A stretch of 62,912 nucleotides of DNA, filler included, from Bigelowiella natans CCMP2755 (Eukaryota; Protista; Cercozoa): the NCBI GenBank assembly GCA_000320545.1. It is 9 parts of 9 records of this genome, joined end to end, with 100 filler letters (N's around TTAATTAATTAA, not from the genome) between each part and the next. Parts side by side here need not be neighbours in the genome. Positions count along the whole stretch, not along the records: positions 18,742 to 33,956 come from ADNK01002888.1; 8 more parts are not named here. One strand, written 5' to 3'. Positions 18,742-34,370 of this stretch are shown one piece after another. Position numbers and translations under genes: made by a program. Position 1 is the stretch's first letter; the number at the start of each line of letters is the position of its first letter. The notes beneath the pieces are model-generated. The model was not told where the DNA came from. It did not search any database and worked only from the letters and a program-made list of their open reading frames with translations.

Positions 18742-18852
18742 CCATACTGCAGCATTCTTGACATCCTTATGACCTTTTTCCTTCTTCTTCTTTTTTTTTC
18801 CTTCTTCTTCTTCTTCTTCTTCTACTGCTGCTGCTGCTATTACTCGTCACAG

Positions 18853-19259
18853 AATGCTGATCGTTCACGAAGTCATGGGGAGGCATTGTGGATGGCTCAC
18901 AGTTGCTACCGCTGAGGTAGTAAAGTAGTAGTTGTTGTAGGAGGGGGGGGGAGAAGGAGAAAGAGAATGGCAGGTTGTAAGAGAAGTGGTGATAGGAGCA
19001 AGCCCATCCATCCATGATGGTACTCATCGTTGGAAGCTACGAGAATAGCAGTAGTTACGATGTGATAATAGCACTTCCATGTTTGACGGTGCTGCTGTCA
19101 TTGGTACTACTACTACCACTAATACTTACTACTACAACTCCCTCTCCTACTCCTCCTAGCAATACCGCAAAAGATTGAAGAAAGGCGATTATCTTGACGA
19201 AATGGGGGTAAGTTGTTAAGAATAGCTTGTGCGTATTATACAGGAACATGAATGAAGGG

Positions 19260-19291
<32 letters not shown>

Positions 19292-19546
19292 CGGTATTGC
19301 CCCTTCCTCATTCTCCCCTTCATGGGTAGAACCCTTCGTCGTCATCTTCGTGTGTTTTGTGAATATGAAGCATGGTTGATCCCTGTCAAAAGCAAGTTTG
19401 CAACCCCTTATAATGTAATGAATGGCGGTGTTGCTTGTGCTTGTGCTTGTGCTTGTGCTTGTGCTTGTGTATCGTATCTGCCATTCAATCTATCAATAGA
19501 TCGATAAACGAATCAATAGATGAGCGTTCCTGTCTTCTTCTTTTTC

Positions 19547-19581
<35 letters not shown>

Positions 19582-19711
19582 GCGCCAGGTGTCGCTCACT
19601 AAAAGGGATGTCCATGGGGTGTACATCCCTGAAATGAGAATCGATATTGATGCCGAAGGAGCACGTCTTCGTGCTATTATGGATGAGGTAATACGATATA
19701 CCCATCGTAAT

Positions 19712-19748
<37 letters not shown>

Positions 19749-20129
19749 CGTAAGGAGGAGGGGGAATGATAATATGTAGTGGTGCAAACGACAACGAATA
19801 TATTGGAACCCCTCCCCCCCCCCCCCCTTCAAAGCATCCAGCCAAGAACGATATTGCATCATCAAATTTACTGATTCTTCTACTCAACCCCCCCCCCCTC
19901 GCCTCCCCCTCCTTTTCCCAATCAATCGTTGTAGATCGGCAACGTGAATGTCTTCATCAGCGAGGGTGCTGCACAAGATATCATCGTCAAGGAAAAGGTG
20001 ATGACTTGAAATTGTAGGCTGATGAACTTGGGGTTGACGATGATACAAGAACCTAATACAAAATACAGCGATCTTGCCATTGGAAAGTGCACCATCCGCA
20101 CTACTACTACTAATACTACTAACACAGCA

Positions 20130-20171
<42 letters not shown>

Positions 20172-21265
20172 AATAAATACATGTTGTTGTAGGAAGAAAA
20201 AGGCGAAAAGCTTCCTCGTGACGCCTTTGGACATGTTAAGTTGGACAAGGTTCCAAATACTAATAATACTACTACTACTACTACTATTACTACTACTATT
20301 GTGTTGTGTTCTGCTGCTGTTACTAGTAGTAGTAGCAGTAATGATAGTAAGGATGGTACTGATTGCGTTAAGAGGAAGGATGAGCTTCTAACATTCTGCT
20401 GCTCTACTTTAACCATCACTCATCATCGTTTTTACCATCAATCAATCATCGCTGTACCATCGTTTTTGTCATCATTCTCTATGACAATCATGGCAATCAG
20501 GTGAATGCAGGCCAATGGATGGCAGATCGACTCAAGCCGATTGTAGGTGCTAGGAAAGTGCTGGTACTACTTCTGCGCTATTGTTTGTCTGTTCTTATGA
20601 TATACTTCACACTGTAACTCGAAACGTATTCGCAATATGTTTTGTTATCAACAATGCATGGTACGATGCTGTGCCTAAGTGCGGTGGTGGTCAAGTTGTA
20701 GTAGTGGTAGTAGTAGTAGTAGTAGTATAGTTGAAGCAGTAGTATCGTATAATATCTTGGGATGTTAATACACATCTCGTGCAACCACCCCCCCCCCCCC
20801 CCCTCCAGGTGCAAAAGTCAGGTTACCGTGCACGATCTTCCCCAGCCAACACGTTTGACAGGTGGTGAGAGGAGGAGGAGGAGGAGGGATTTCTATTCCT
20901 ACCCTTCTCTACTTCTTCTTTTTCCTCCTGCTACCACTACCACTTGCATGCATGGGCACAACAACAATAGTAAGTTGGAAGATAGGTAACACGATATATG
21001 GTATTCTCGTAGCAGTATAACGTTATAATTCACGTCTTTCTTCGTTTGCTGTTGTTGTTGTTGTTGTTGTGGGTCACCATGAAAGGAATCTAATCAAAAG
21101 CTGTGTGACTTATGCCGTCGAGGCTGCTTTCAGGGGTATGTTTGTATGTATGTATGTATGTATGTATGTATGTGTGTATGTATGATGTTGATGAGTATAT
21201 AGTTATAACCATAATTATGATGACTCTTCATACTAATAATTATAAAACTATTATATATATATTAA

Positions 21266-21297
<32 letters not shown>

Positions 21298-21681
21298 CAT
21301 TTGTTGTTTACGGAGCTGCTCACGATGTGTGTGTGATTACTTGTGTCCTCTCATGTCGATGATGTAGGAGAAAGTGGCCTTGTTGGCCACGATGATCAGG
21401 ACGGAAAGCTTAAGGTGTTTGCAACTACGATCTACTAATACTACTACTACTTTAACTACTACTACTACTACTACTACTACTACATGTTTGCTTGTTATTG
21501 GGTGGTGGTGGTTGGTGTTGTTGTTGTTGGACCTCTGTATCAAGCATCATCATCATCATCATAGCGTTCATCATCATCTTCTTCTTCTTCTTCTTCTTCT
21601 TCTTCTTCTTCTTCCAGGCGTTGGACTTTAAGCGCGTAAAAGGAGGAAAACCATTCGATACAGGTAGTGCTGCCATATTTC

Positions 21682-21716
<35 letters not shown>

Positions 21717-21749
21717 GTGGTTGTGACGTAAAGTAGCCGAGAATTATAT

Positions 21750-21781
<32 letters not shown>

Positions 21782-21980
21782 ATTGCACGAATCAAGTGTA
21801 CAAGGATGAGGGCTATTACTATATGAAAGCACACACGCTTGTCAGCCACCATCTACCTACTTGCAGCAAATCTCGATTGTGTATCTACGATTTGTTTATT
21901 GCCACTTTAGCCTAATCAATGAAGTTGGTGGCGTCGTGTTGTTCGTTATTGAATCACAAAGCATTTCTCCTCCCCTCCCA

Positions 21981-22012
<32 letters not shown>

Positions 22013-22072
22013 GGATCCAGAGAATACCGTCGGATGATGTTTGAGATAGGACAACCTGTCGAGCGCACTTGG

Positions 22073-22075
<3 letters not shown>
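18853..22075 (+). CDS. pfp: Pyrophosphate-dependent phosphofructokinase (PPi-PFK/PFP), Propionibacterium-like type; C-terminal half, N-terminal half in gap; apparent 1-nt frameshift at ~20840
   Basis: Exons: RMLIVHEVMGRHCGWLTVATAE (18853-18916) / QYRKRLKKGDYLDEMG (19160-19207) / VSLTKRDVHGVYIPEMRIDIDAEGARLRAIMDE / IGNVNVFISEGAAQDIIVKEK / EEKGEKLPRDAFGHVKLDK / VNAGQWMADRLKPIVGARKVL / VQKSGY.ARS(P)ANTFDR / NLIKSCVTYAVEAAFRG / ESGLVGHDDQDGKLK / ALDFKRVKGGKPFDT / GSREYRRMMFEIGQPVERTW*. This matches the MGR, SEG, GHVKLD, QKSGY and GGKPFD motifs of this PFK clade. Confidence 0.93.
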
Positions 22076-22109
<34 letters not shown>

Positions 22110-22673
22110 CAAAGAGAAGGAGGAGGAGGAGGAGCAGGAGGAGGAGGAGCAGGGAAGACAGTTACTACTCAACACGAAAAGCAGTATGAAGAGAGGAGGG
22201 GGGGGGGCGGTTTCACTGTAGCACTATGCAATAACGGATACAAATATCAAAGATTGAATCTATGCAATTGAGACAAAAGAAGAAATTAACTAGATGATGA
22301 TGGCGACAACGCTAGATGTGAATCGTGATATAGCAGTATCAGTAGTTGCAGCACATCTTGTAAGAGAATGGTGCTTGTTGTCGCGTATTCAATAGACCTA
22401 ATAAACCAGCATGGGTGCAGCAAATCGTCACATATGAATAATAGCTACTACTCAACAGAAACCTACATGAATCGAATGAGGTAGTAGGTCTTTATTTGAG
22501 ACATGCGGCAGTCATGCACGGCGTAACTTGTTATTAATGACAAAAGCCATAGCGTAGCTAGCAACGAACAAAATTCAGCTTTTACTTGAGTCCAATTCTC
22601 AATGCACACAGCGCAGTCATGATTTAGCAGTCATTTAATGATGGCGCACGCATTGCTGTGTTGCAAAATTGTA

Positions 22674-23190
22674 GACATGTGATGCCATGTGTATGCCACA
22701 CATGACATTACTGTGTCTATTACAAGTATGGCTCCATCATGGACATGTCTAGATGTGATGCCATGCATGTGCTACACATGATGTCACTGTGTCCATTGTG
22801 AGCATGCTAGCATGGCTCTGTCATGGACATGCAACACCATGCATGTACCATGTGTGATGTCACTGTGTCCATCACAAGTGTGGCTCTGTTGTGGACATGT
22901 GACACCATGCACACACCACACATGATGTCACTGTGTCCATCACAAGTGTGGCTCCATCATGGACATGCAATGCCATGTGTACACTGTGCATGATGTCACT
23001 GTGTCCATCATGAGCATGGCTCCATTGTGGACATGCAATGCCACATGCATACCACACATGACATCACTGTGTCCATTGCAAGTGTGGCTCTGTCACAGAC
23101 ATACAATACCATGTGCATACTGTGCATGGCTCCATTGCAGACATGCAACACCACACATGTACTACATGTGACATTGCTGTGTCTGTTGTC
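22674..23190. repeat. Tandem array of ~8 copies of a 68-bp unit, completely CpG-free
   Basis: Unit starts at 22674, 22742 (84-bp unit with insertions), 22826, 22894, 22962, 23030, 23098 (truncated, 42 bp) and 23140. Consensus-like unit: gacatgtgacaccatgcacacaccacacatgatgtcactgtgtccatcacaagtgtggctccatcatg. Confidence 0.95.
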
Positions 23191-24450
23191 AAAATGTTGA
23201 CTACTAGATGCGACTGGATGGGCACACACAACGCTCGACGCTGCATGCAAGTAGGCGTCGTGTTCACAACAGCGTGGTGTTTTTTCGATCAGATCTGCGA
23301 GGGAGGGTTGTCACAATTGGAAATGTCATGCAAAACTGTGTAGTCCGTGGCAGGATGTCCAATGCCGATCGCGCGCAGTTGCTAGCGCAGAGTGGGCACT
23401 ATTATTGTTCAAATGAATTCTGTGTTGCTTTGTGAATGTTGAGCGCATGCGCAGAAACAGTCAAGAATGCGCTGAGAATGCGATCGGATGTTCATGCATA
23501 CATTCCTAGATCTTGCGCGGCTGACCAATGGCAATTTGAATTGCCCCAACCGCTAGTTGCAACAGTGGTGGCAGCACCACGCTAGCACGCTAGCACGTGT
23601 TACAACTGCGCATGCATGCAGGCTGCTAGCAGAGCAACTTGTTTATTGTGCATGTGGTGTCGCGTTGTATGGTGCTGGATCCAGCGTCACGCATGCATAG
23701 CCCAGCTAGCTACTAGCTAGCTAGATCTAGAGTGTTGCATACCGGGTTTCTGCTGGATGTGACATGGACAACAGCAAGCGCTGTGCACGTAGCCGCTGCT
23801 TCACATGGATGGCTACGCTAGAATGACCATCGAAGCTATTTGGTTGCTTTGTCACACACACACGTCTCACATCTACCGCAGTATTTAGAGATTAGAGATG
23901 TTGCATGATGACGACTGTGTGACTACACTACATGCTAGCATGTGTTTCGCTCACTATCACGCACTAGGTTATCAAGTTAGCGCCGGTCTGCACACATAGC
24001 TGCAGCACGTTGTTCCTAAACTTTCCAGCACGTGCGTGCCCAAAACATTGCGCTCGCGTACGTACGATGCAATGCAACACTTCATGGGAGCTGCAAAGAC
24101 GTACGTGAGCAGTAGCTTCGACAACGAGCGCATCTGACTGTAGCATACACATCCATACATGTGCATATACACATATACATCGCAGCATTGTCATGCACCC
24201 CCCTACGGTAATAGCATTCTTGCGTTTAACAATTATAGTTATATTGCGTCTGGTTATTAGTGCATTCATTTGATCAAGTATGCGATCATATCAGCAAGAA
24301 CCAGCTCGTCCATGAATGCTATCTAAATATTGTTTTCTTATGTGTGCAGAGTCATCGTCACCATGCACGCTATATGTACATGGTAGATGTACTTGCCCAT
24401 TATGCTTGTGGTATCCCTTAAGACATGACGCAAGCTGCTCCTCGATATCC
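23190..24450. other. Intergenic CATG/CTAG-rich block (possible eroded repeat)
   Basis: Runs such as gctagcacgctagcacg, cagctagctactagctagctagatctag and catgcatgca, with no credible ORF. Confidence 0.55.
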
Positions 24451-25119
24451 GCTGCACATACCCCGTTTTTGTTTTTGGCTGGAAAAACATGATGCGTTAT
24501 AATTCAGGTTAATTGAGCCATAGAATCATCTCTTCTTATCGATTCGTGATCTAATCATTCATCTTACCATATATACGGCTATCTGCGTGTGTATGTGTGT
24601 TTGTGTGTGTGTGTGTGTGTGTGCGTGTGTATTTAAAGTTAATATAGCATATCCCCTTACGGCTGATGATATCCTCGCTCATCGCCACTACTGCTTCTTG
24701 CTACTACCTCTGCACCACCTCGCTCACATCGATCTGTCATGTACATTTCCAATACAAAGACGACTCAGAGAGTACCACCAACAACACACACGAGCTAAGA
24801 CAATATTATGATTTGATTAGGCGCGGTAGCAACCACCATTTCGTCTAGTTGTAGATCGTCTATACTCCTTTCCAGCTCGTGCAGCGTGGGGCCATGTGAG
24901 GGCTACAAATATAACAACAGAGGTGTTTCAAACGATAATGCTCTCATGGCTATGTGCAGGAGGATAAGGCTGCGAGTACTCTTCACATGCATGCACACCC
25001 CATTGATTCGGTTCTTCCATAGAAGAGTATAGTTGCGCTGTATTTACAAGTTATCACACCGCTATTGGGATGTCATTGCACACGCATTTCCTCGCGACAA
25101 TAACCCCAATCTCCTTCAT

Positions 25120-26281
25120 TCAAAATTGAGTATTCAATGGTGAAATCGGTGAGGGGTGGATTTCAGATCTGGTCACTTGCTAGAATAGCAGTGCAGAGAA
25201 CATATATATCAGTCATCGTTGTCCATCTGTTGGCTAACCCTAATGCAATACCTTGTTTTTATGTTTCCTATGATGCTTCTTACGATGCTCCTTCTGATGC
25301 TCCTTCGGATGCCTTCGATCTGCAAATATGCCTCTCCCCCTCCCCTCTTCTTCACCAGCCTCCTGCTGATTCTCCTGAAGCTGCTTTTTCTCCTGAAGCT
25401 GCTTATTCTCCTGAGTTGTTTGTTGCTGACGATACGGTTAACATGCGTGAGTTTTTGCCCTTTTTAGACAAGAGCATACACGCATACTTTGCTCATGTAG
25501 CATGGTTTTACAAGAGTAATGACAATCATAATGATCATGGGATTCATATGAATTACGGATTGATATATCAAGAAATGAATAATTATAAAATATACTTTAA
25601 TAGATAGCACATATTAATAAACGATGTATACCTCATCTTTTGCTTGGTTTCTTTCTTCTATCTCGATCCTCCGTTTTTGTACACGGCGTCTGGCCTTCCC
25701 AGCTGCCATTTCTTTCTTCCTTTGCTCGTTTTCAATCCCTAATAACAACGTGGTGATACATCGTGTCATCATCATCATCATCATCCGTGATTGACTACCG
25801 ATCATACTATTGAGGTTATATGATAAATATTTACGCACCAAATAAGACCAAAGTAGGAGACACACACGCACACACACCATTAAATGTGTATCAACGACGA
25901 AAAATATCCAACATGTGATGATGCTAATTGATTCACGACGCGGCAAATGTTATATTCTCATAACACAACATCTCTCGTACGAGTTTCAACTGCAGCTTTC
26001 TCCCTAAGAGCCTTTTGCTCCTCCTCGTTTTTCTGAGCAAAGAGCAAAGTACACACGATGTATAACCAAACGACTCGCAATAAAACTGCGAACAGTGTGG
26101 ATATGTATGAAAGCACTAAATCAACACATCTGCCCAGCACCCGCAAGTTACATGATGATTCGCATCGTGCTCGCAATAATCGAGGATAAAGAAGAATGAT
26201 GGCTACCAATTTGTACTCCGTATCGAGTCTTTCCAGGACCTTGGTCACCTCCCCCTGCAAGGGCGGAGGAGGACAACGAGA

Positions 26282-26321
<40 letters not shown>

Positions 26322-26676
26322 TGGAAAATACGAGAAGAGTGAGCAGCGACAACAACCCAAGCAACAAACATAATCTATCACTTATCGTGCAGCATATTTG
26401 AAAATGAGCTTTTCATCACATCCCCCTCCCCTTCGCCCTTTTCCTCCTCATCCTCCTCGTTCCTCTAGTCTTTTTGATGCTATACTTTACTCTCTGCTCA
26501 CGCCTGCATTGTGGTGTTTTAAGTGATTAATTTGGGCGAGGAATGACCCTTTTCTTCTCTTTCCTTTGGACTCTTGCATATACTGAGCGAAACTTCGCCT
26601 GAGAATAAGAGGCAAGAGCACAGGAGGAAATCTTATCAAATATGATGAGAATTCTATAAATAATTTATATATATAT

Positions 26677-26763
<87 letters not shown>

Positions 26764-26929
26764 ATGATCTCATTAACAATGAGCATTTTTTGAGAATTAG
26801 TTGTTCATATAACGCACAATAAGCACAGCTAAGCTTCTCTTTGCCTTTTCAGGTTTGACACCTAAGTTAACATATAAAGTATTGTGATATATATATACTC
26901 TCTCTCTCTCTCTCCCTCTCTCTCTCTCC

Positions 26930-26969
<40 letters not shown>

Positions 26970-28021
26970 GTAAGTGGGATTGACAGAGTGCCAAGTAGCC
27001 TGACCAAGGCCGTTTCGCTTGGACCAAAACTCCCAGAATTCACTGCGAGTAATCATGCCGTCATTATCCTGAATATTGACACCAACGACACACACCAATG
27101 AGTTCTGCCTCCTCCTCATCCTCCTCCTCCTCCTCCTCCTCCTTTCCGTTGATTTTGCTAATCCTATGAACGATGACGTATTGGATTGATGATGATGAGC
27201 ATGTAAGCTACCTCATCGTAGGCTCTCCATAGGGTTTCAAGTTTGTCTGCTTCTTGCACTCCAAGAGCCTAATACCCCCCCCGTGTTGTTGTTGTTGTTG
27301 ATGATGATGCTATGATGATAGAGAAATATAATATAATATATATATATATATATATATAATATTGCTTCTCCTCGATGCGGTGTTATTAACGTCACCCTCG
27401 CGACTAATACCATATCTTGCCCTTCTTCACGGTACAAATATTACTATGGAGAAGATATGGTAAACGAAACTTGTCTATTCATTCGATGCTATTCTTCTTC
27501 TACTCCTCCTTCGCATTGGCGTTGCATAAGACGCAAGAATAAGTAGCTCAAACATGGGATATAACAACTAATGCGCTCTCTGTGCGCTCTCTCTTTACTG
27601 TACGTACTGAGAGATGGGACTGAAACTCCCTTGCATCGATAGTGCCTGTCCTAAGGTTTGAACGATTGCATTGCAGGGGGGATGTTAGTTCTTCTTTCAA
27701 CGATGGTGAAGGATGATAATAACGACAAAAGCTCCATTGTTTTCTTTATTCCATATTGACAACCAAAAAAAGGTCTAGCATTCTCTATCGCTTTTGCTTG
27801 TCATTTGACACCACGTGGTGATGATATATCTGCGGGTTATTGCTTACTCGTCATCGTCCATAGCATCAAAGAGAACATTGACAGAGCTGGAATAGAGCAA
27901 ACAATGCATTCAAGAACTATCTTATTTGTGGTAGTGCGTGCCCCGATGTAGATGCTTCGTTGGCCATATCAACCGAACATGCAGCATGTGCTCCGTACAG
28001 TACAGAGCCCATAAAAGTGAG

Positions 28022-28058
<37 letters not shown>

Positions 28059-29265
28059 AGAGCTTTGCTTGATAAATTTGACCTTCTCAGATTTTTCCCT
28101 TTCAGCTCGACATCGTATATAAAACTGACCAATTAGAGCAGGGAACAAATATATACCATGTTATGAACAATAAACTGGAGACAGATGCTGCATATCATCG
28201 TCATCATCATCCTTATTATATTCTCCCCAATTATTTATTACTCAGCGTCTGTAGATTTCGCGACGATTGTTCGGAATATAATCTGCATCGATACAATTAT
28301 GCATCCATCAGCGAGGTTGCGTGTGAGTAGTAGCCACGCGGTCTTTCCTTTTAGGTAAGAAATGGTTGGTATATTATTGGGGAGGAGGGAGGCCTACCAG
28401 CGCTTTATGAACCCTCTTTTCGAATTCATTCCTCGTCACTAAGAATGGTAGCAAACTAATTAAAACGTGTCTATTCAATCCACGTCTGTGCGTGTCCTCT
28501 TTGATATACCATGTCTATTCGCTTCGATATAAAACTCAATAAACTCAGTCTCTGAAATAATGCCGTCGTTATTCTGATCAAGTAATAACAGTGAATGCAA
28601 CGTTTCATGAATGGTTGATATGAGACGCTTTACCGTGTCATAGTTGTCGAATATAGTCTGATAATCAATCGAGTGATGCGATTTCGAATAACCCTGCAAG
28701 AAATTCCAGCAATTGGTTTGTGAAATTTAATTAGAATTAACTATCACGTGATGTCTACGACATTAAAGAAACAAGTAGTGGCAGAAATCTGTGTGATGCC
28801 TTTCCTCGCAACGCCCAGATAATCATTACACCCATGGCTTCTGCTATGTACCTCAAACTGATCTACGATTTCCCTAATCGTCAGGTAGCCTGACCTGTAT
28901 GCAAGAGATTATCATATAATCAAACCACCCTGTATGCAACTGATTTTATAGCATACACTCACAAACACCACCCTGGAGAGCATCGACATGTACCATCACA
29001 TTTCAGTGCCTATGCGCAAAGATTTATTTTAATAAACTGTAACAATACCTGTCGTCATCTAAGGCAACAAATAGCTTCTTTGCTAGCTTTTGCCTATCAC
29101 CCTTGCACTTTTTTATCTGCAAGATGTCAGTTTGCGCACACATCCGGAAGTCATTTTTGCCGTCGTGAAAAGCTGTTCAGAGAAGACAAAACGCGTTACA
29201 CAGGCCAGAAATCAACCGACCTCCTTGTAGATCTCTTGCGGATCCTTCGAAAACTTGTTTCCCAT
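25120..29265 (-). CDS. Putatively N-myristoylated calcium-binding protein with four EF-hands, an IQ-like segment and a charged coiled-coil C-terminus
   Basis: Exon 1 (29265-29221) reads MGNKFSKDPQEIYKE (MGxxxS myristoylation motif). EF loops: DDDRSGYLTIRE, DTNNDGIISETE, DDDETGTIDARE, DEDNDGMITRSE. Then LAVLI/AKFRSVYARVQRKEKKR, GEVTKVLERLDTEYKL, KNEEEQKALREKAAVET, RIENEQRKKE.. and a Q/E/H/K-rich exon. The 3' terminal exon is uncertain. Confidence 0.85.
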
Positions 29266-29599
29266 CGCTTTCAATAGGATGGGGCAATGATGAGTTGAAC
29301 TGATCAATGAATGCAGGGGGGAGACGACGAGCTAGATATTGCCGTAAATGCCGGTACTGCTGTTGTATTCTACCAATCGTGTAAAATGATGTTCTTTTTA
29401 ATGCTGCGACATCTATTTTACGCCAAAATAATCTAGATAATTTACTCGTCATGGGCGACAGTTTTGCGATTCTTGGGCCCAGGAGAAATTTCCAAAAGAC
29501 GTTGCTACGACTCGTAGTGTGCGCAACAAAATAGGGTTGTCGCAGCCTCCTTTTCCCCTGCTTTTGGGGAAAATCCGGGACAGCTGGATGGGACAGAAT

Positions 29600-30420
29600 G
29601 GTGCGAGCATTTGGTGCAGCATGCTGGTGCAGAGCATGATTTCACTGTCATTGGCCTAGTAGCAATTGTTCATTAGTGGGATGCTAGTGGCTTAGCAGAG
29701 ATGTAGAGCAAGAGAGAGGAAGGAGAAAGATGCGATGTCTGTGGCAGTGTCTCTGAAACCAGCTAGCCAGTTCTGGAACTCCAGCTAGCCAGGAGTTCTG
29801 GAGTTGTTGGTGGTGCCGACACAGACGCTGCACGTTCACAGTCTACAAGTGTGGTTGTTTGACAGCGAAGTCAACCACCACATGCCGTCTGAATCAGCTC
29901 TGCGAGCATGCCAACAAGGACAGTGATTTGCATCACGTGCCCCTCTGCGTGCAACGCTGAACGCCCACCACCAGACCAGCCTAGCAGCCCATTCCATTCA
30001 GGCACTTTTCCAGATCGAACTCAGTTTCCAATGTCAAACTTTAGGCGCAGTGTGCGCTGGCGAAAATTGAGATGTTTGGACGCATGTGTGAGCCAACAAG
30101 CCTAGAAGCAACCGTGTGAAACACGCACGCGTGCACACGCAAGCTGCCAGAAAGGAAACTGCCATTGCTAGATTGCACCAGCAACGCGCTGCTGCACATT
30201 TATTATTAGACTTCCATCATCGTAAGCAATCTAGCAATGCTGAAATGCAACAATGCACGCTCTAGCTTAGACGTGCTAGCGCTAATGCATGATGTCTAGA
30301 TGTGACGAATGCAACCGTTCACAGTTTCGCATCACAGAATGAAACAGCTAGACAGTCCCGACCGTCCATGTTTTGCACAAGTAAACATTGGGTGATGTGT
30401 GCATTGGATATAAGTTCATC
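29600..30420. other. Intergenic CATG/CTAG-rich block
   Basis: Same composition (agctagccag twice, gctagcgctaatgcatgatgtctaga), between the EF-hand and PPR genes. Confidence 0.5.
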
Positions 30421-30438
30421 ATCATTTTCATTATGGTT

Positions 30439-30617
30439 TTATAGTTTCTGTTTTCCAACTGTCAAGAACTGTGCCCACTCTGCGTCCGTTAGTACCTGGC
30501 AAGTTAAGTTGCGTTGTGTTGAGTAGAACTGATGAGCATATACTGATATGTCTTTGCGTGTGTCTCTGTGTGTGCGTACATTTTTATTATTCCGTCGATC
30601 GTTACAAGCAATAACGG

Positions 30618-30675
<58 letters not shown>

Positions 30676-31637
30676 ATCGTCTGTTTGTATGTAGCAGATG
30701 TTATCATCACATGAATCTGGTACATATTTCCGAAAGAATCGTCCTACCTCGCTATGCGTGCTGCCATCATCAGCCTCGTGGTCAACATGCGACTCTTCAC
30801 TTGTTCTGCTCCTCTTCCCCCCCCCTCGAATCCCAATGTGAGACCTCAAGGAGCTTTGTCTTTTCATAATTCCAGAGAACACAGGCAAGGACTTAGCGCT
30901 CATATCTTGTGCAGCAGCAGCAGCAGCAGCTTCATGCTCGGGTGACATCTGCGTGACGTACATATCTGCCGCTGAATCTACCACTTCTTTTATAGACTCG
31001 CTAATTCTTTCAGGGTTTTTGCAAAGAACGTTTTCTCCTGATTTCCTCCTGCTGCTGCTGCTAGTAGGCTGCGCCCCCCCCCCCTCCTTTCTACTGTCAG
31101 GAAGGGGGCTCGAGCCAGAACCAGTGAAATGTACGTTATTGTTTTCTTGGTCTTCGGTGTTTGCTGAGGTCGTGTGGTGAGTAGACATGAGGGGGGAGTA
31201 GGAGGAGGACAGGGATAGAAGGTGCAAATCCATACGACTCTTAATTCCTTCACGGTTGATTTTCACTACATCGTAGGCTCTATCTAATAGCGAGTCTTCT
31301 TCCTCGTTCTCTCTATCGCCCTTCCTTCTTCGATCGGCGGTCATTCGTTTGCTTCTCCCCTCCCCCCCCACCTCCGTGCGAACAACGGAAGATCCTTCAT
31401 AGCGCAGCGCAGCTCTTGCGAGTGCTTTGTCTACGATTATCTCCGGTCTCAGCAACAACTGGTCGGGGGAGGAGGAGCCGTTTTTCCAACCTTCAAATGT
31501 CAATCTGAAGATGATGATGATGTTATAACAACAAAGGGAGCACGTTCCACGGCAGCGTGAATATATATAGTCCTTGCAGTTTGCGTATCTATACTACCAA
31601 TGTTGCATCACCGAAATGGTTGAAAGGATGATGATAG

Positions 31638-31673
<36 letters not shown>

Positions 31674-32563
31674 TTTCTCATGTTGGAGAGGGGCTCAGGA
31701 CTGCCCTCAGATGCCTCTATAGCTTCCATAAGTAGGTTAAACGTCGCGTAATCGAGGCTCAGGTTGAGAGATTTTGTCTGTAAAGTGTCGCACGTATGAT
31801 ATGATAATTTATATATGAGAGAGAGTGAGTGCGTGTGTGTGTGTGTGTGTGTGCATGTATGCTTGTGAATATGAGTACTTCGGGTGAGAGGGTATTACAC
31901 ATGTTTATATTCCCAAAAAATGTGTAATCAAAAGAGTACACAAGCACACGCACAAATATATGCATTATTTATGTATTATAAACTCGAGGACCTGTTTCAA
32001 TGCTTCTCTTGCCGTATTGAAGTCTTTATCGTTAATGCAGGCTAATATCACCGTGGCAAAAGCCTCCATTGATGGAAGAACACCCTATTTTCATATAATT
32101 GTCGTTACAAGATATTAGCATGAAGTAGCATGGATGTGTGTATGTTTGTGTGTGTATGTGTGTGTGTGTGTGTGTGTGTGCGTAAGGGAGGATGGAGAGC
32201 GTCAAAGCATAACCTCTTCGCACATCTGGAAAAACTGTTTGAGGCCGTTCTTGATGTCGCCCTTCTTCGTAAGAGCGAAAATCAGCGCAGAGTAGGTTCT
32301 GCAGTAGAGAGTTGAGAGAGTAACGTTAAAGCGAGCACGGCAAGGAGTCATCGTGCACACGAGGAGGAGGAGGAGGAGGGGACAACAAGGGCGTGAATCA
32401 TATCCCGCTTTCCAGAATGATATCACCAGGTTTTATATGAGAAGGAAGATGGTAGATGTATAGTTTGCGTGCAGCAGCCCAACCGTGTCTTCTACTTTGT
32501 GTGTTATCTAGACGAAGATCGTATCTGATGATCATCGAACATACATACAGCACTACTACACGT

Positions 32564-32594
<31 letters not shown>

Positions 32595-32782
32595 GTAGTA
32601 GGTAGTAGTATTTGAAGTAGAATTATTACGTGGAGTCAGGTCTTATGTTCGCCTCCTTCATCTCATCAAACACCTAAGGCAGTAGTAGCGGAGCAGCAGA
32701 ATACCATGATTCTAGTTGGTGGCAGATCCCTCCTCCCCCGCCCCCTCGCTTTCATCCCTTCCAGGTATGATATAATATTCAT

Positions 32783-32821
<39 letters not shown>

Positions 32822-33238
32822 TATACATATACATATACATATATCCGTGGTACCTTGCAAGTCAGCACCCAGTCTCCAGCTTTTGAAGAAGCAAGGATTA
32901 GAGCATTCATATGTGCATACCTATAACACACACACACACGCACACACACACACACACGCGCGCGCGAGCGCGCATACACAACACCAGAAGAACAATAACA
33001 ACAACGGCTATCAGCACATAGTAACAGCACGCAACGCACATATCATTAACGTGAGCGAAGCAGTAGTCTCCTACTACTCCTTATCCATGCAGCACCCACA
33101 CAGACTGTGTGCTGCCAAAGAGTAAAAGTTTTTGTTTTGATGTACTGCGTACGTCGTTCCATCAGGCTCAAGGTTTTGAGCTCTCAAGAGCTGAAATACG
33201 ATCAGTGCCTTGTTGTAGCGACCGGCTTTTTTATAAAG

Positions 33239-33327
<89 letters not shown>

Positions 33328-34370
33328 CGTGAGCAATGCTCACGTGTGCCCCCCCCCCCCTCCCAGCCTATAACCGCTGAGTATTGAAACTAAATCTCTA
33401 CAAGCATGCAGCTGCGTGGGGAGAGGGAGGTGGCATGAACCTGCACGTATTCATGAGAGAATTGTACGTCGATGTTTCTGGCATTACCCCTGATGACACC
33501 TAGAGGAGAGCATATAACCCTTTATAAAACCATCAGGCACCCACCATCTGTCTGCCATTAAATTCAATATATAGATATTAAATCATCGCTATCATTTGGC
33601 GCTTTTAGTTACGTGGGGCTCTATTAGGAGAATTATTGATTTAGTGTCTAAATCCCCTTTCCCCCCCTCCCATCCTTTTAGTCGCCTCTCACTCACTATG
33701 TTTGGGAGGTGTTTAGGTGAGGGCACTTACCATTTTGACGTACATACGCAGAGCACGTTCCCAGTGATTTGTCTTCTCAACATGTGGCAATCATCAAGTT
33801 ATACCTAATAAAGGAAGAGGAGGAAGAGGAGGTGGAGGAGGAGGAGGAGGAGGAGGAGGAGGAGGAAGAGAGAGTATTAGATACTAACGAAGACGCTGTT
33901 GTGTTGTTTGGGGATATGGACATCGAGGTACTTGCCTACTTACGTTTGCGTGTATGNNNNNNNNNNNNNNNNNNNNNNNNNNNNNNNNNNNNNNNNNNNN
34001 TTAATTAATTAANNNNNNNNNNNNNNNNNNNNNNNNNNNNNNNNNNNNNNNNNNNNTTTGTTTCTACAAACGCTTACAGAATAATATGTGTTTTTAGAGA
34101 GAGAAAGTGTGTGTGTTTGTGTGTGTTTGTGTGTGTGCGCGCGCGCGTATGACAAAACGCAAATACCGTCGCTTGCCAGGTGAGGGGGAGACTCATAAAC
34201 AGCTCGCAGGTACGCTTGGCCAAGAATCCACCGATATTGTCCGATGTCTTCCCATCGCTCGTTCCCCTCCTCAAAGGAGAGTTCATCGTGGCCGACGCCT
34301 TCACCTCTCCTTTACCTGCACGAGTGCGGCGGTTGCAGCACATCGAGGGTAGGAATAAGAAGAGGAGAGA

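What the first reader, a model, noticed from the sequence alone, without database searches (positions are those of the whole stretch)
22651..23210. 68-bp tandem array whose copies differ only by CA/TG/TA swaps: footprint of complete CpG-targeted (RIP-like) hypermutation in a protist
SEEN: aligning the four central units (22826, 22894, 22962, 23030) gives 16 variable dinucleotide columns, and every one varies only among CA, TG and TA. Examples: ccat-CA-CA-ag-TG-TG / ccat-CA-TG-ag-CA-TG / ccat-TG-CA-ag-TG-TG, and gctc-TG-t-TG-TG / gctc-CA-t-CA-TG / gctc-TG-t-CA-CA. All other positions in these units are identical. There is no CpG between 22651 and 23210 (560 nt), although the GC content would predict roughly 30, and exons nearby are CpG-rich. 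KNOWLEDGE: CA and TG are the two single-step deamination products of CG (one per strand), while CA<->TG directly needs two changes; TA is the double-hit product. INFERENCE: the ancestral unit was CpG-rich, expanded, and then each CpG in each copy was mutated independently to saturation while non-CpG sites gained no substitutions. CpG mutation therefore far outran the background rate, more like fungal repeat-induced point mutation (RIP, CpG-biased in some basidiomycetes) or enzyme-driven 5mC deamination than slow passive decay. The TA columns suggest a secondary CpA target. To my knowledge such a process is not described for algal or rhizarian protists.
Basis: partly seen in the sequence, partly recalled or inferred. 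Interest (0 to 1): 0.88.

Follow-up and report, generated by a model that had tools for sequence, protein, structure and literature searches.

The report
CpG-erased 68-bp minisatellite in Bigelowiella
A small tandem repeat in the alga Bigelowiella natans has lost every CpG to TpG, CpA or TpA, independently in each copy, while almost nothing else changed, which is the classic footprint of cytosine-methylation-driven mutation aimed at one repeat in a lineage where such methylation has not been described.

Summary
An array of about 8 units of 68 bp (22674-23200) has 19 variable pyrimidine-purine sites. Their 141 cells read TG 61, CA 66, TA 14 and CG 0. The other 30 columns (217 cells) carry only 2 substitutions, both beside an indel. 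The 562-bp CpG-free gap (22649-23211) matches the array and is the longest in the piece. About 30 CpGs are expected there, and the flanks, exons and introns have CpG o/e of 0.84-1.11.

States are random between units, balanced between strands, and show no same-strand runs. Six other CA/TG sites never vary. This two-class pattern fits CG ancestors and rejects generic CA/TG flipping. CpG loss outran other substitutions by at least 114-fold.

The host is Bigelowiella natans (Rhizaria), from a Sanger and 454 assembly. Published tables list DNMT6 as its only C5-methyltransferase and no RID.

My best reading is repeat-confined CpG methylation followed by site-by-site deamination. A dedicated RIP-like machine is possible but not required, and two of its hallmarks are absent. 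This is a single locus, no CpG-retaining relative was found, and genome-wide tests were not possible.

The parts
22650..23210 (.). CpG-free zone, bounded by CpGs at 22649 and 23211 and coextensive with the tandem array
   Evidence: the gap is 562 bp, 46% GC, with 29.7 CpGs expected and 0 observed. TG+CA o/e is 2.66.
22651..22673 (+). Possible partial unit at the left edge. It shares the 11-mer CATTGCTGTGT (22651-22661) and a CAAAAT..GAC tail with the end of U7 (23172-23200). CpGs at 22645 and 22649 lie just upstream.
   Evidence: Read directly. A transition-tolerant alignment of the flanks to the unit is not significant (P=0.89 left, 0.08 right), so this is only suggestive.
22674..22741 (+). 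U0, a full 68-bp edge unit with 5 TA states among its 19 sites
22742..22825 (+). U1, 84 bp. It has two 8-bp insertions, at 22742-22749 and about 22806-22814. Both insertions carry CTAG. The only two substitutions outside Y-R sites lie next to the first insertion.
22826..23097 (+). U2-U5, four full 68-bp core units (starts 22826, 22894, 22962, 23030). They have 16 variable CA/TG/TA sites, and the other 36 columns are identical.
23098..23139 (+). U6, 42 bp, lacking unit positions 32-57 (a deletion between two ..YRTG microhomologies)
23140..23200 (+). U7, the terminal unit. Its first 50 nt are in register and its tail is degenerate.
25860..29344 (-). Neighbouring EF-hand protein gene of Bigelowiella natans, with 15 exons. 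It identifies the organism and is not part of the array.
   Evidence: the MMETSP transcript L001 maps at 97-100% identity. JGI model Bigna1 90960 (P0003) maps from 29265 to 24421; weak EF-hand matches in Pfam.

Best explanation
The array began as about 8 near-identical copies of a 68-bp unit that was very rich in CpG (18-19 CpGs per unit, roughly 76-78% GC). After amplification, the repeated DNA alone was marked by symmetric CpG cytosine methylation. The likely enzyme is DNMT6, the only C5-methyltransferase reported for B. natans. Methylated cytosines then deaminated one site at a time. A hit on the top strand gives TG, a hit on the bottom strand gives CA, and a later second hit gives TA. This continued until no CpG was left, while ordinary substitutions had hardly begun. 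Shown here: the CA/TG/TA-only spectrum, the absence of CG, the balance between strands, the independence between units, the two classes of Y-R sites, the confinement to the repeat, and the rate ratio. Inferred: the methylation itself, the enzyme, and whether deamination was spontaneous or helped by the methyltransferase.
For: (1) The 19 sites give 141 cells: TG 61, CA 66, TA 14, CG 0, against 24.5 CG expected under independent columns. (2) CA:TG is 66:61, binomial P=0.72, as expected for equal hits on the two strands. (3) Y-R sites fall into two classes, 19 saturated and 6 never varying. If all were freely flipping, the chance of 6 or more invariant sites is 3e-10. (4) There are 0-3 substitutions in 217-233 cells outside former CpGs, none of them an A/T transition, so CA-to-TG switching through ordinary transitions is excluded. 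The CpG to non-CpG rate ratio is at least 114-276 (95% bounds). (5) Units share states at chance level (0.43 against 0.41, P=0.19), so decay followed amplification. (6) The CpG-free gap coincides with the array. The flanks, exons and introns keep CpG o/e of 0.84-1.11, and CpG-bearing microsatellite tracts survive 10 kb away (32938-32973). (7) The assembly is Sanger and 454 and the genome is haploid, so long-read basecalling artefacts and heterozygosity are excluded. (8) B. natans encodes a DNMT6.
Against: No CpG-retaining copy or relative of the unit was found, and the flank homology is not significant. CG ancestry is therefore inferred from pattern alone. The inferred ancestor is extreme for a 45% GC genome. 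No 5mC data exist for B. natans in the library searched. The function of DNMT6 is described as elusive. A ratio of at least 114 is about ten times what I recall for vertebrate CpG decay, so passive decay would need poor T:G repair or a very low background rate. TA at 10% of former CpG sites, against 1 of 54 at constant CA/TG sites, is not fully explained. Only one locus was available.
Confidence: 0.62

Rival explanations
1. A dedicated, homology-dependent hypermutation system that is RIP-like but specific for CpG detects the duplicated 68-bp units and actively deaminates their CpG cytosines over one or a few cell or sexual cycles.
For: The mutated zone ends within about 25 bp of the repeated DNA on both sides. 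CpG loss is saturated with almost no background change, a ratio of at least 114. TA double hits are enriched at former CpGs (P=0.05). CpG-targeted, RIP-like hypermutation exists in Pucciniomycotina fungi (PMC3318451).
Against: There are no same-strand runs of hits (66 of 126 against 62.5 +/- 5.6), whereas, from my own knowledge, RIP typically leaves strand-coordinated tracts. Published tables list no RID/DNMT4-type enzyme for B. natans. A few sites (5-6, 36-37, 45-46) look decayed before the last amplification, which suggests a continuing process rather than a burst. Sexual reproduction is not established for this haploid flagellate. The units are only 68 bp and the array about 530 bp, which is near or below the length I recall RIP needing in Neurospora.
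Confidence: 0.2
2. The sites were never CG. CA, TG and TA interconvert by some other route, such as general hypermutability of pyrimidine-purine steps, inversion of short CA/TG microsatellite cores, TA ancestors, or selection that keeps the other columns constant.
For: The unit and its right flank are rich in CA/TG and CATG (TG+CA o/e is 1.64 in the right-hand 1 kb with normal CpG). The piece is full of (CA)n and (TG)n microsatellites. No CG-bearing copy was found.
Against: Six CA/TG sites never vary while 19 are saturated (P=3e-10 under a single class). TA is its own reverse complement, so it cannot arise by inversion, yet it shares sites with CA and TG. TA ancestors would predict TA as the commonest state and some CG, but TA is 10% and CG is 0. 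None of the constant A/T columns shows a transition. There is no coding frame, no Rfam match and no unusual fold that would argue for selection.
Confidence: 0.06
3. The pattern is a sequencing, cloning or assembly artefact, for example methylated CpGs miscalled as TG or CA, or collapsed reads.
For: Tandem repeats are hard to assemble, and methylation-related miscalls are known for some long-read platforms (my own knowledge).
Against: The B. natans assembly is Sanger and 454, which do not miscall 5mC. 141 of 141 cells are converted with coherent dinucleotides. The flanking gene matches an independent transcriptome at 97-100%.
Confidence: 0.02

Closest known systems
Decay of methylated CpG in vertebrate repeats (Alu elements, satellites) by 5mC deamination
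   Same: CG is replaced by TG or CA, symmetrically on the two strands and site by site. Homologous sites in different copies carry different products.
   Different: Here the decay is complete while other sites are about 99% intact, a ratio of at least 114 against roughly 10-fold in vertebrates (my own knowledge). The surrounding unique DNA is not CpG-depleted. The host is a rhizarian alga with only a DNMT6.
RIP-like CpG/TpCpG hypermutation in Pucciniomycotina (Microbotryum; Horns et al. 2012, PMC3318451)
   Same: C-to-T transitions at CpG in repeated DNA, far above background, in an organism where ordinary methylation decay seemed an insufficient explanation.
   Different: No 5' T is required here: only 3 of the 19 sites have a 5' T, and all 19 decayed. 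The target is a tandem minisatellite rather than dispersed transposons. The lineage is not fungal, and no RID homologue is reported.
Neurospora-type RIP
   Same: Transitions are confined to duplicated sequence and drive it to saturation.
   Different: The target is CpG, not CpA. There are no strand-coordinated runs. RID/DNMT4 is absent according to the literature. A premeiotic stage is unknown.
MIP (methylation induced premeiotically; Ascobolus, and CpG-only in Coprinus), from my own knowledge
   Same: The mark is coextensive with the repeated DNA and has sharp edges. CpG-restricted methylation would then decay to TG or CA.
   Different: MIP itself is epigenetic and leaves the sequence intact. 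Here only a mutational footprint is seen. Methylation was not measured.

Membership tests
Footprint of 5-methylcytosine deamination at CpG | Loss of CpG with a reciprocal excess of TpG and CpA | tested here: met
   In the array CpG o/e is 0.00 and TG+CA o/e is 2.66. In the rest of the piece these are 0.79 and 1.27.
Footprint of 5-methylcytosine deamination at CpG | Homologous sites in different copies carry TG or CA (rarely TA), with the two strands hit equally | tested here: met
   TG 61, CA 66, TA 14, CG 0. Binomial P=0.72.
Footprint of 5-methylcytosine deamination at CpG | A copy or outgroup that still has CG at those sites | tested here: not met
   No other copy was found in the piece, in metagenomes, in viral contigs or in prokaryote genomes. 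The flank alignment is not significant. The B. natans genome itself could not be searched.
Footprint of 5-methylcytosine deamination at CpG | The organism has a C5 DNA methyltransferase and 5mC at the locus | not testable with these tools
   From the literature only: DNMT6 (jgi_Bigna1_42181) is the sole DNMT listed for B. natans. No methylome paper was found.
RIP (Neurospora type) | C-to-T transitions confined to duplicated DNA | tested here: met
   The CpG-free gap 22649-23211 matches the array 22651-23200. The flanks have o/e of 0.87 and 1.11.
RIP (Neurospora type) | CpA is the preferred target | tested here: not met
   Six constant CA/TG sites show 0 of 46 changes, and site 5-6 shows 1 of 8. 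All the change is at inferred CpGs.
RIP (Neurospora type) | Strand-coordinated tracts of mutation | tested here: not met
   66 of 126 neighbouring CA/TG states are alike, against 62.5 +/- 5.6 in shuffles, P=0.29.
RIP (Neurospora type) | A RID (DNMT4-type) enzyme and a premeiotic stage | not tested
   The supplement of Hoguin et al. 2023 marks DNMT4 as absent in B. natans. I did not check this here. The life cycle is not testable.
RIP-like TpCpG hypermutation (Pucciniomycotina) | Preference for a T 5' of the CpG | tested here: inconclusive
   Only 3 of 19 sites have a 5' T, and all 19 are fully decayed, so T is not required. A rate preference cannot be measured at saturation.
MIP-like repeat-coextensive methylation | The modification has sharp limits at the ends of the repeated DNA | tested here: met
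   This is seen as a footprint only: the first CpGs lie 2 bp outside the partial left unit and about 11 bp beyond the end of U7.

The most novel reading that the evidence does not exclude
Bigelowiella natans has a homology-sensing genome-defence pathway that recognises even a 0.5-kb tandem array and erases its CpGs. It would do this either by repeat-coextensive CpG methylation (MIP-like) or by direct deamination (RIP-like), with DNMT6 as the only C5-methyltransferase. This would be the first such system outside fungi and the first function assigned to DNMT6.
Probability: 0.2. Interest if true: 0.8.

Novelty: new member of a known kind. Interest (0 to 1): 0.5.

Why it matters
CpG decay of methylated repeats and fungal RIP are well known. 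Nothing was found in the searchable literature on cytosine methylation or repeat-targeted mutation in chlorarachniophytes or any other Rhizaria. DNMT6 is the only DNA methyltransferase listed for this alga, and it has no established function. A locus where all of about 140 CpGs are gone, while neighbouring unique DNA keeps its CpGs and other bases are about 99% unchanged, is indirect evidence of three things: CpG methylation exists or existed here, it is aimed at repeated DNA with sharp borders, and it is strongly mutagenic. This gives a concrete, cheap test locus for methylome sequencing and for DNMT6 genetics in a transformable algal group. It also gives a ready-made signature (CA/TG/TA-only variation between repeat copies) to scan for across the genome.

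Tried and rejected
(1) I searched for other or CpG-retaining copies with Y/R-degenerate patterns. In the piece only the array matched. JGI metagenomes gave 0 hits with two patterns, viral contigs gave 0, and prokaryote genomes gave 0.

(2) I tested whether the flanks hold relic units that still carry CG, using a transition-tolerant local alignment against dinucleotide shuffles. The result was not significant. The tempting hand alignment of 23205-23290 to a unit is therefore dropped.

(3) No RNA family matched. Single-strand folding of four units gave z=0.26. ORFs across the array are spurious.

(4) The 384-aa ORF at 30442-31593 has no homologues and no Pfam match.

(5) No long repeats other than microsatellites occur in the piece, so the spectrum could not be compared with a second family.

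(6) A higher-order 136-bp structure is not supported by the sharing of states between units.

(7) Literature on B. natans methylation: nothing was found. Huff & Zilberman 2014 is not held. The supplement of PMC10538959 does not list the species.

(9) I considered a nanopore miscall artefact and rejected it, because the assembly is Sanger and 454.

Full report
**1. What is in the sequence**

Tandem Repeats Finder reports a 68-bp period (22813-23117, 4.5 copies, 75% matches) and its double, 136 bp. Reading the region in register shows eight units:
- U0 starts at 22674.
- U1 starts at 22742. It is 84 bp long because of two 8-bp insertions.
- U2, U3, U4 and U5 start at 22826, 22894, 22962 and 23030.
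- U6 starts at 23098. It is 42 bp long and lacks unit positions 32-57.
- U7 starts at 23140. It is in register for about 50 nt and then degenerates until about 23200.

Patterns of the unit with Y/R at the variable positions match only these units. They gave 5 and 7 matches, against none in 100 shuffles.

**2.

Among U2-U5 there are 16 variable dinucleotide sites, and the other 36 columns are identical. Over all eight units there are 19 sites where a C/T column is followed by an A/G column. Their 141 cells read TG 61, CA 66, TA 14 and CG 0. If the two columns of each site varied independently, 24.5 CG and 38.5 TA cells would be expected. C therefore goes almost only with A, and T almost only with G.

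The remaining 30 columns (217 cells) carry two substitutions. Both are transversions in U1, directly next to its first insertion.

The stretch without CpG runs from the CpG at 22649 to the one at 23211. That is 562 bp of 46% GC, where composition predicts 29.7 CpGs. The next longest gap in the 15-kb piece is 217 bp, in DNA of 17% GC.

**3. Tests of what produced the pattern**

- **Two classes of site.** Nineteen Y-R sites are saturated with mixed states, and six (CA at 3-4 and 13-14; TG at 30-31, 39-40, 41-42 and 56-57) never vary. If all Y-R steps were freely flipping, a site would be invariant over 8 copies with probability 0.0035. Six or more of 25 such sites has P=3e-10. This is what is expected if some sites were CG and others were already CA or TG when the unit was amplified. 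It rejects a general instability of CA/TG steps.
- **No ordinary transitions.** None of the constant A/T columns shows a single A-to-G or T-to-C change. Switching between CA and TG through ordinary transitions and a short-lived CG is therefore excluded.
- **TA rules out inversion.** TA is its own reverse complement, yet it shares sites with CA and TG.
- **Strand balance.** CA:TG is 66:61 (P=0.72).
- **Independence between units.** Two units share the state of a site 43% of the time, against 41% for random draws (P=0.19). The changes therefore came after amplification and independently in each unit. Three sites (5-6, 36-37, 45-46) are uniform in the core units and had probably decayed earlier, which hints at a continuing process.
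- **No strand runs.** Along the array, 66 of 126 neighbouring CA/TG states are alike, against 62.5 +/- 5.6 in shuffles. There is no sign of a processive, one-strand agent.
- **Rate ratio.** With 0 of 133 CpGs surviving, the CpG rate times elapsed time (k·t) is at least 3.8. With 0-3 events in 217-233 other cells, the ratio of rates is at least 114-276 (95% bounds), with a point estimate of about 300-400.

**4. Confinement to the repeat**

CpG o/e values are as follows:

| Region | CpG o/e |
|---|---|
| Array | 0.00 |
| 300 bp to the left | 0.87 |
| 300 bp to the right | 1.11 |
| Exons of the neighbouring gene | 0.92 |
| Introns of the neighbouring gene | 0.84 |
| Rest of the piece | 0.79 |

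CpG also survives inside other simple repeats, for example ...ACGCGCGCGCGAGCGCGC at 32938-32973. CpG is therefore not generally unstable in this genome.

**5. Organism and context**

A full-library protein search with the EF-hand exon at 28478-28726(-) found P0003 and P0002. P0003 is EukProt EP00466_Bigelowiella_natans_P009874, which is JGI Bigna1 model 90960. It maps exon by exon at about 100% identity to 29265-24421 on the minus strand. A transcript from a JGI-hosted sample (L001, the source of P0002, whose cluster also holds an MMETSP protein) maps in 15 exons at 97-100% identity to 29344-25860.

The window is therefore nuclear DNA of the chlorarachniophyte Bigelowiella natans (Rhizaria). 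The array lies in non-coding DNA, about 1.2 kb beyond the last modelled exon.

The published assembly is Sanger plus 454, the genome is haploid, and its GC content is 45% (PMC12730881). This removes long-read methylation miscalls and heterozygosity as explanations.

**6. Mechanism**

The simplest account has three steps:
- A CpG-dense unit (18-19 CpGs in 68 bp, about 76-78% GC if CG is restored at the variable sites) was amplified to about 8 copies.
- The repeated DNA, and only it, was then CpG-methylated.
- 5mC deaminated site by site on either strand until no CpG was left.

The supplementary tables of Hoguin et al. 2023 list DNMT6 (jgi_Bigna1_42181, CAMPEP_0169625186) as the only DNMT of B. 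natans. They mark DNMT1, 3, 4/RID and 5 as absent, and the same paper calls DNMT6 function elusive. I did not verify the gene content myself.

The pattern cannot tell whether deamination was spontaneous or catalysed by the methyltransferase or another enzyme. The ratio of at least 114 is about ten times the vertebrate value I know of, so it needs either poor T:G repair, a very low background rate, or enzymatic help.

A true RIP-like system remains possible (I give it about 0.2). However, the target is CpG and not CpA, there are no strand-coordinated tracts, and no RID is reported.

**7. Loose ends**

- **TA states.** TA is commoner at former CpGs (13 of 133 cells) than at constant CA/TG sites (1 of 54; P=0.05). 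It is concentrated in the edge units U0, U6 and U7 (10 of 46 cells, against 4 of 95 in the core; P=0.002). Older edge units that have collected second hits would explain the second point but not clearly the first.
- **No CG-bearing relative.** None was found in any collection that could be searched.
- **Flank similarity.** An apparent unit-like stretch with CGs in the right flank did not beat shuffled controls, so I make no claim from it.
- **No sign of function.** The array has no Rfam match, no unusual fold and no coding frame.

**8. Verdict**

The feature is real and the CG-ancestor reading is strongly supported. It is a clean, extreme example of a known kind of footprint: methylation or deamination decay of CpG confined to a repeat. 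It occurs in a lineage where neither 5mC nor repeat-targeted mutation is documented in the literature I could search. It is one locus, and the claim of a RIP-like machine is not established. I rate its interest as moderate.

Noticed in passing
window 22557-23939 (also 29082, 29762, 29784, 30275): The palindrome GCTAGC occurs 13 times in the piece against 3.3 +/- 1.7 expected. Nine of these lie within 1.4 kb around the array and its right flank. Both 8-bp insertions in U1 carry CTAG. The same flank is also rich in GCATGC and CATGCATG. This could be a regulatory motif cluster or a relic of another element.
   Followed up: partly
window 24421-29344, minus strand: JGI gene model Bigna1 90960 (434 aa, P0003) disagrees with the MMETSP transcript (240-aa ORF, P0002). 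The transcript's stop lies at about 26530, and its 3' UTR is spliced (26207 to 26033). The model reads on through further exons to 24421 and includes low-complexity segments that look like retained intron. It may be an over-extended or fused model.
   Followed up: partly
window 18742-33956: Microsatellite density is very high: 75 TRF rows in 15 kb, including (TA)53 at 26655-26760, many (GT)n and (AC)n tracts, and trinucleotide runs. This sits oddly with the remark in PMC12730881 that SSRs such as [AT]n are largely absent from B. natans.
   Followed up: no
window 32922-32973: An (AC)n microsatellite grades into a CpG run (...ACGCGCGCGCGAGCGCGC). This shows that alternating purine-pyrimidine, CpG-dense tracts do arise and persist in this genome. 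It may be a model for the origin of the CpG-dense ancestral unit.
   Followed up: no
window 22651-22673 and 23172-23200: The two ends of the array resemble each other (CATTGCTGTGT ... CAAAAT ... GAC) more than they resemble the core units, as if the array grew from the middle of an older duplication.
   Followed up: partly
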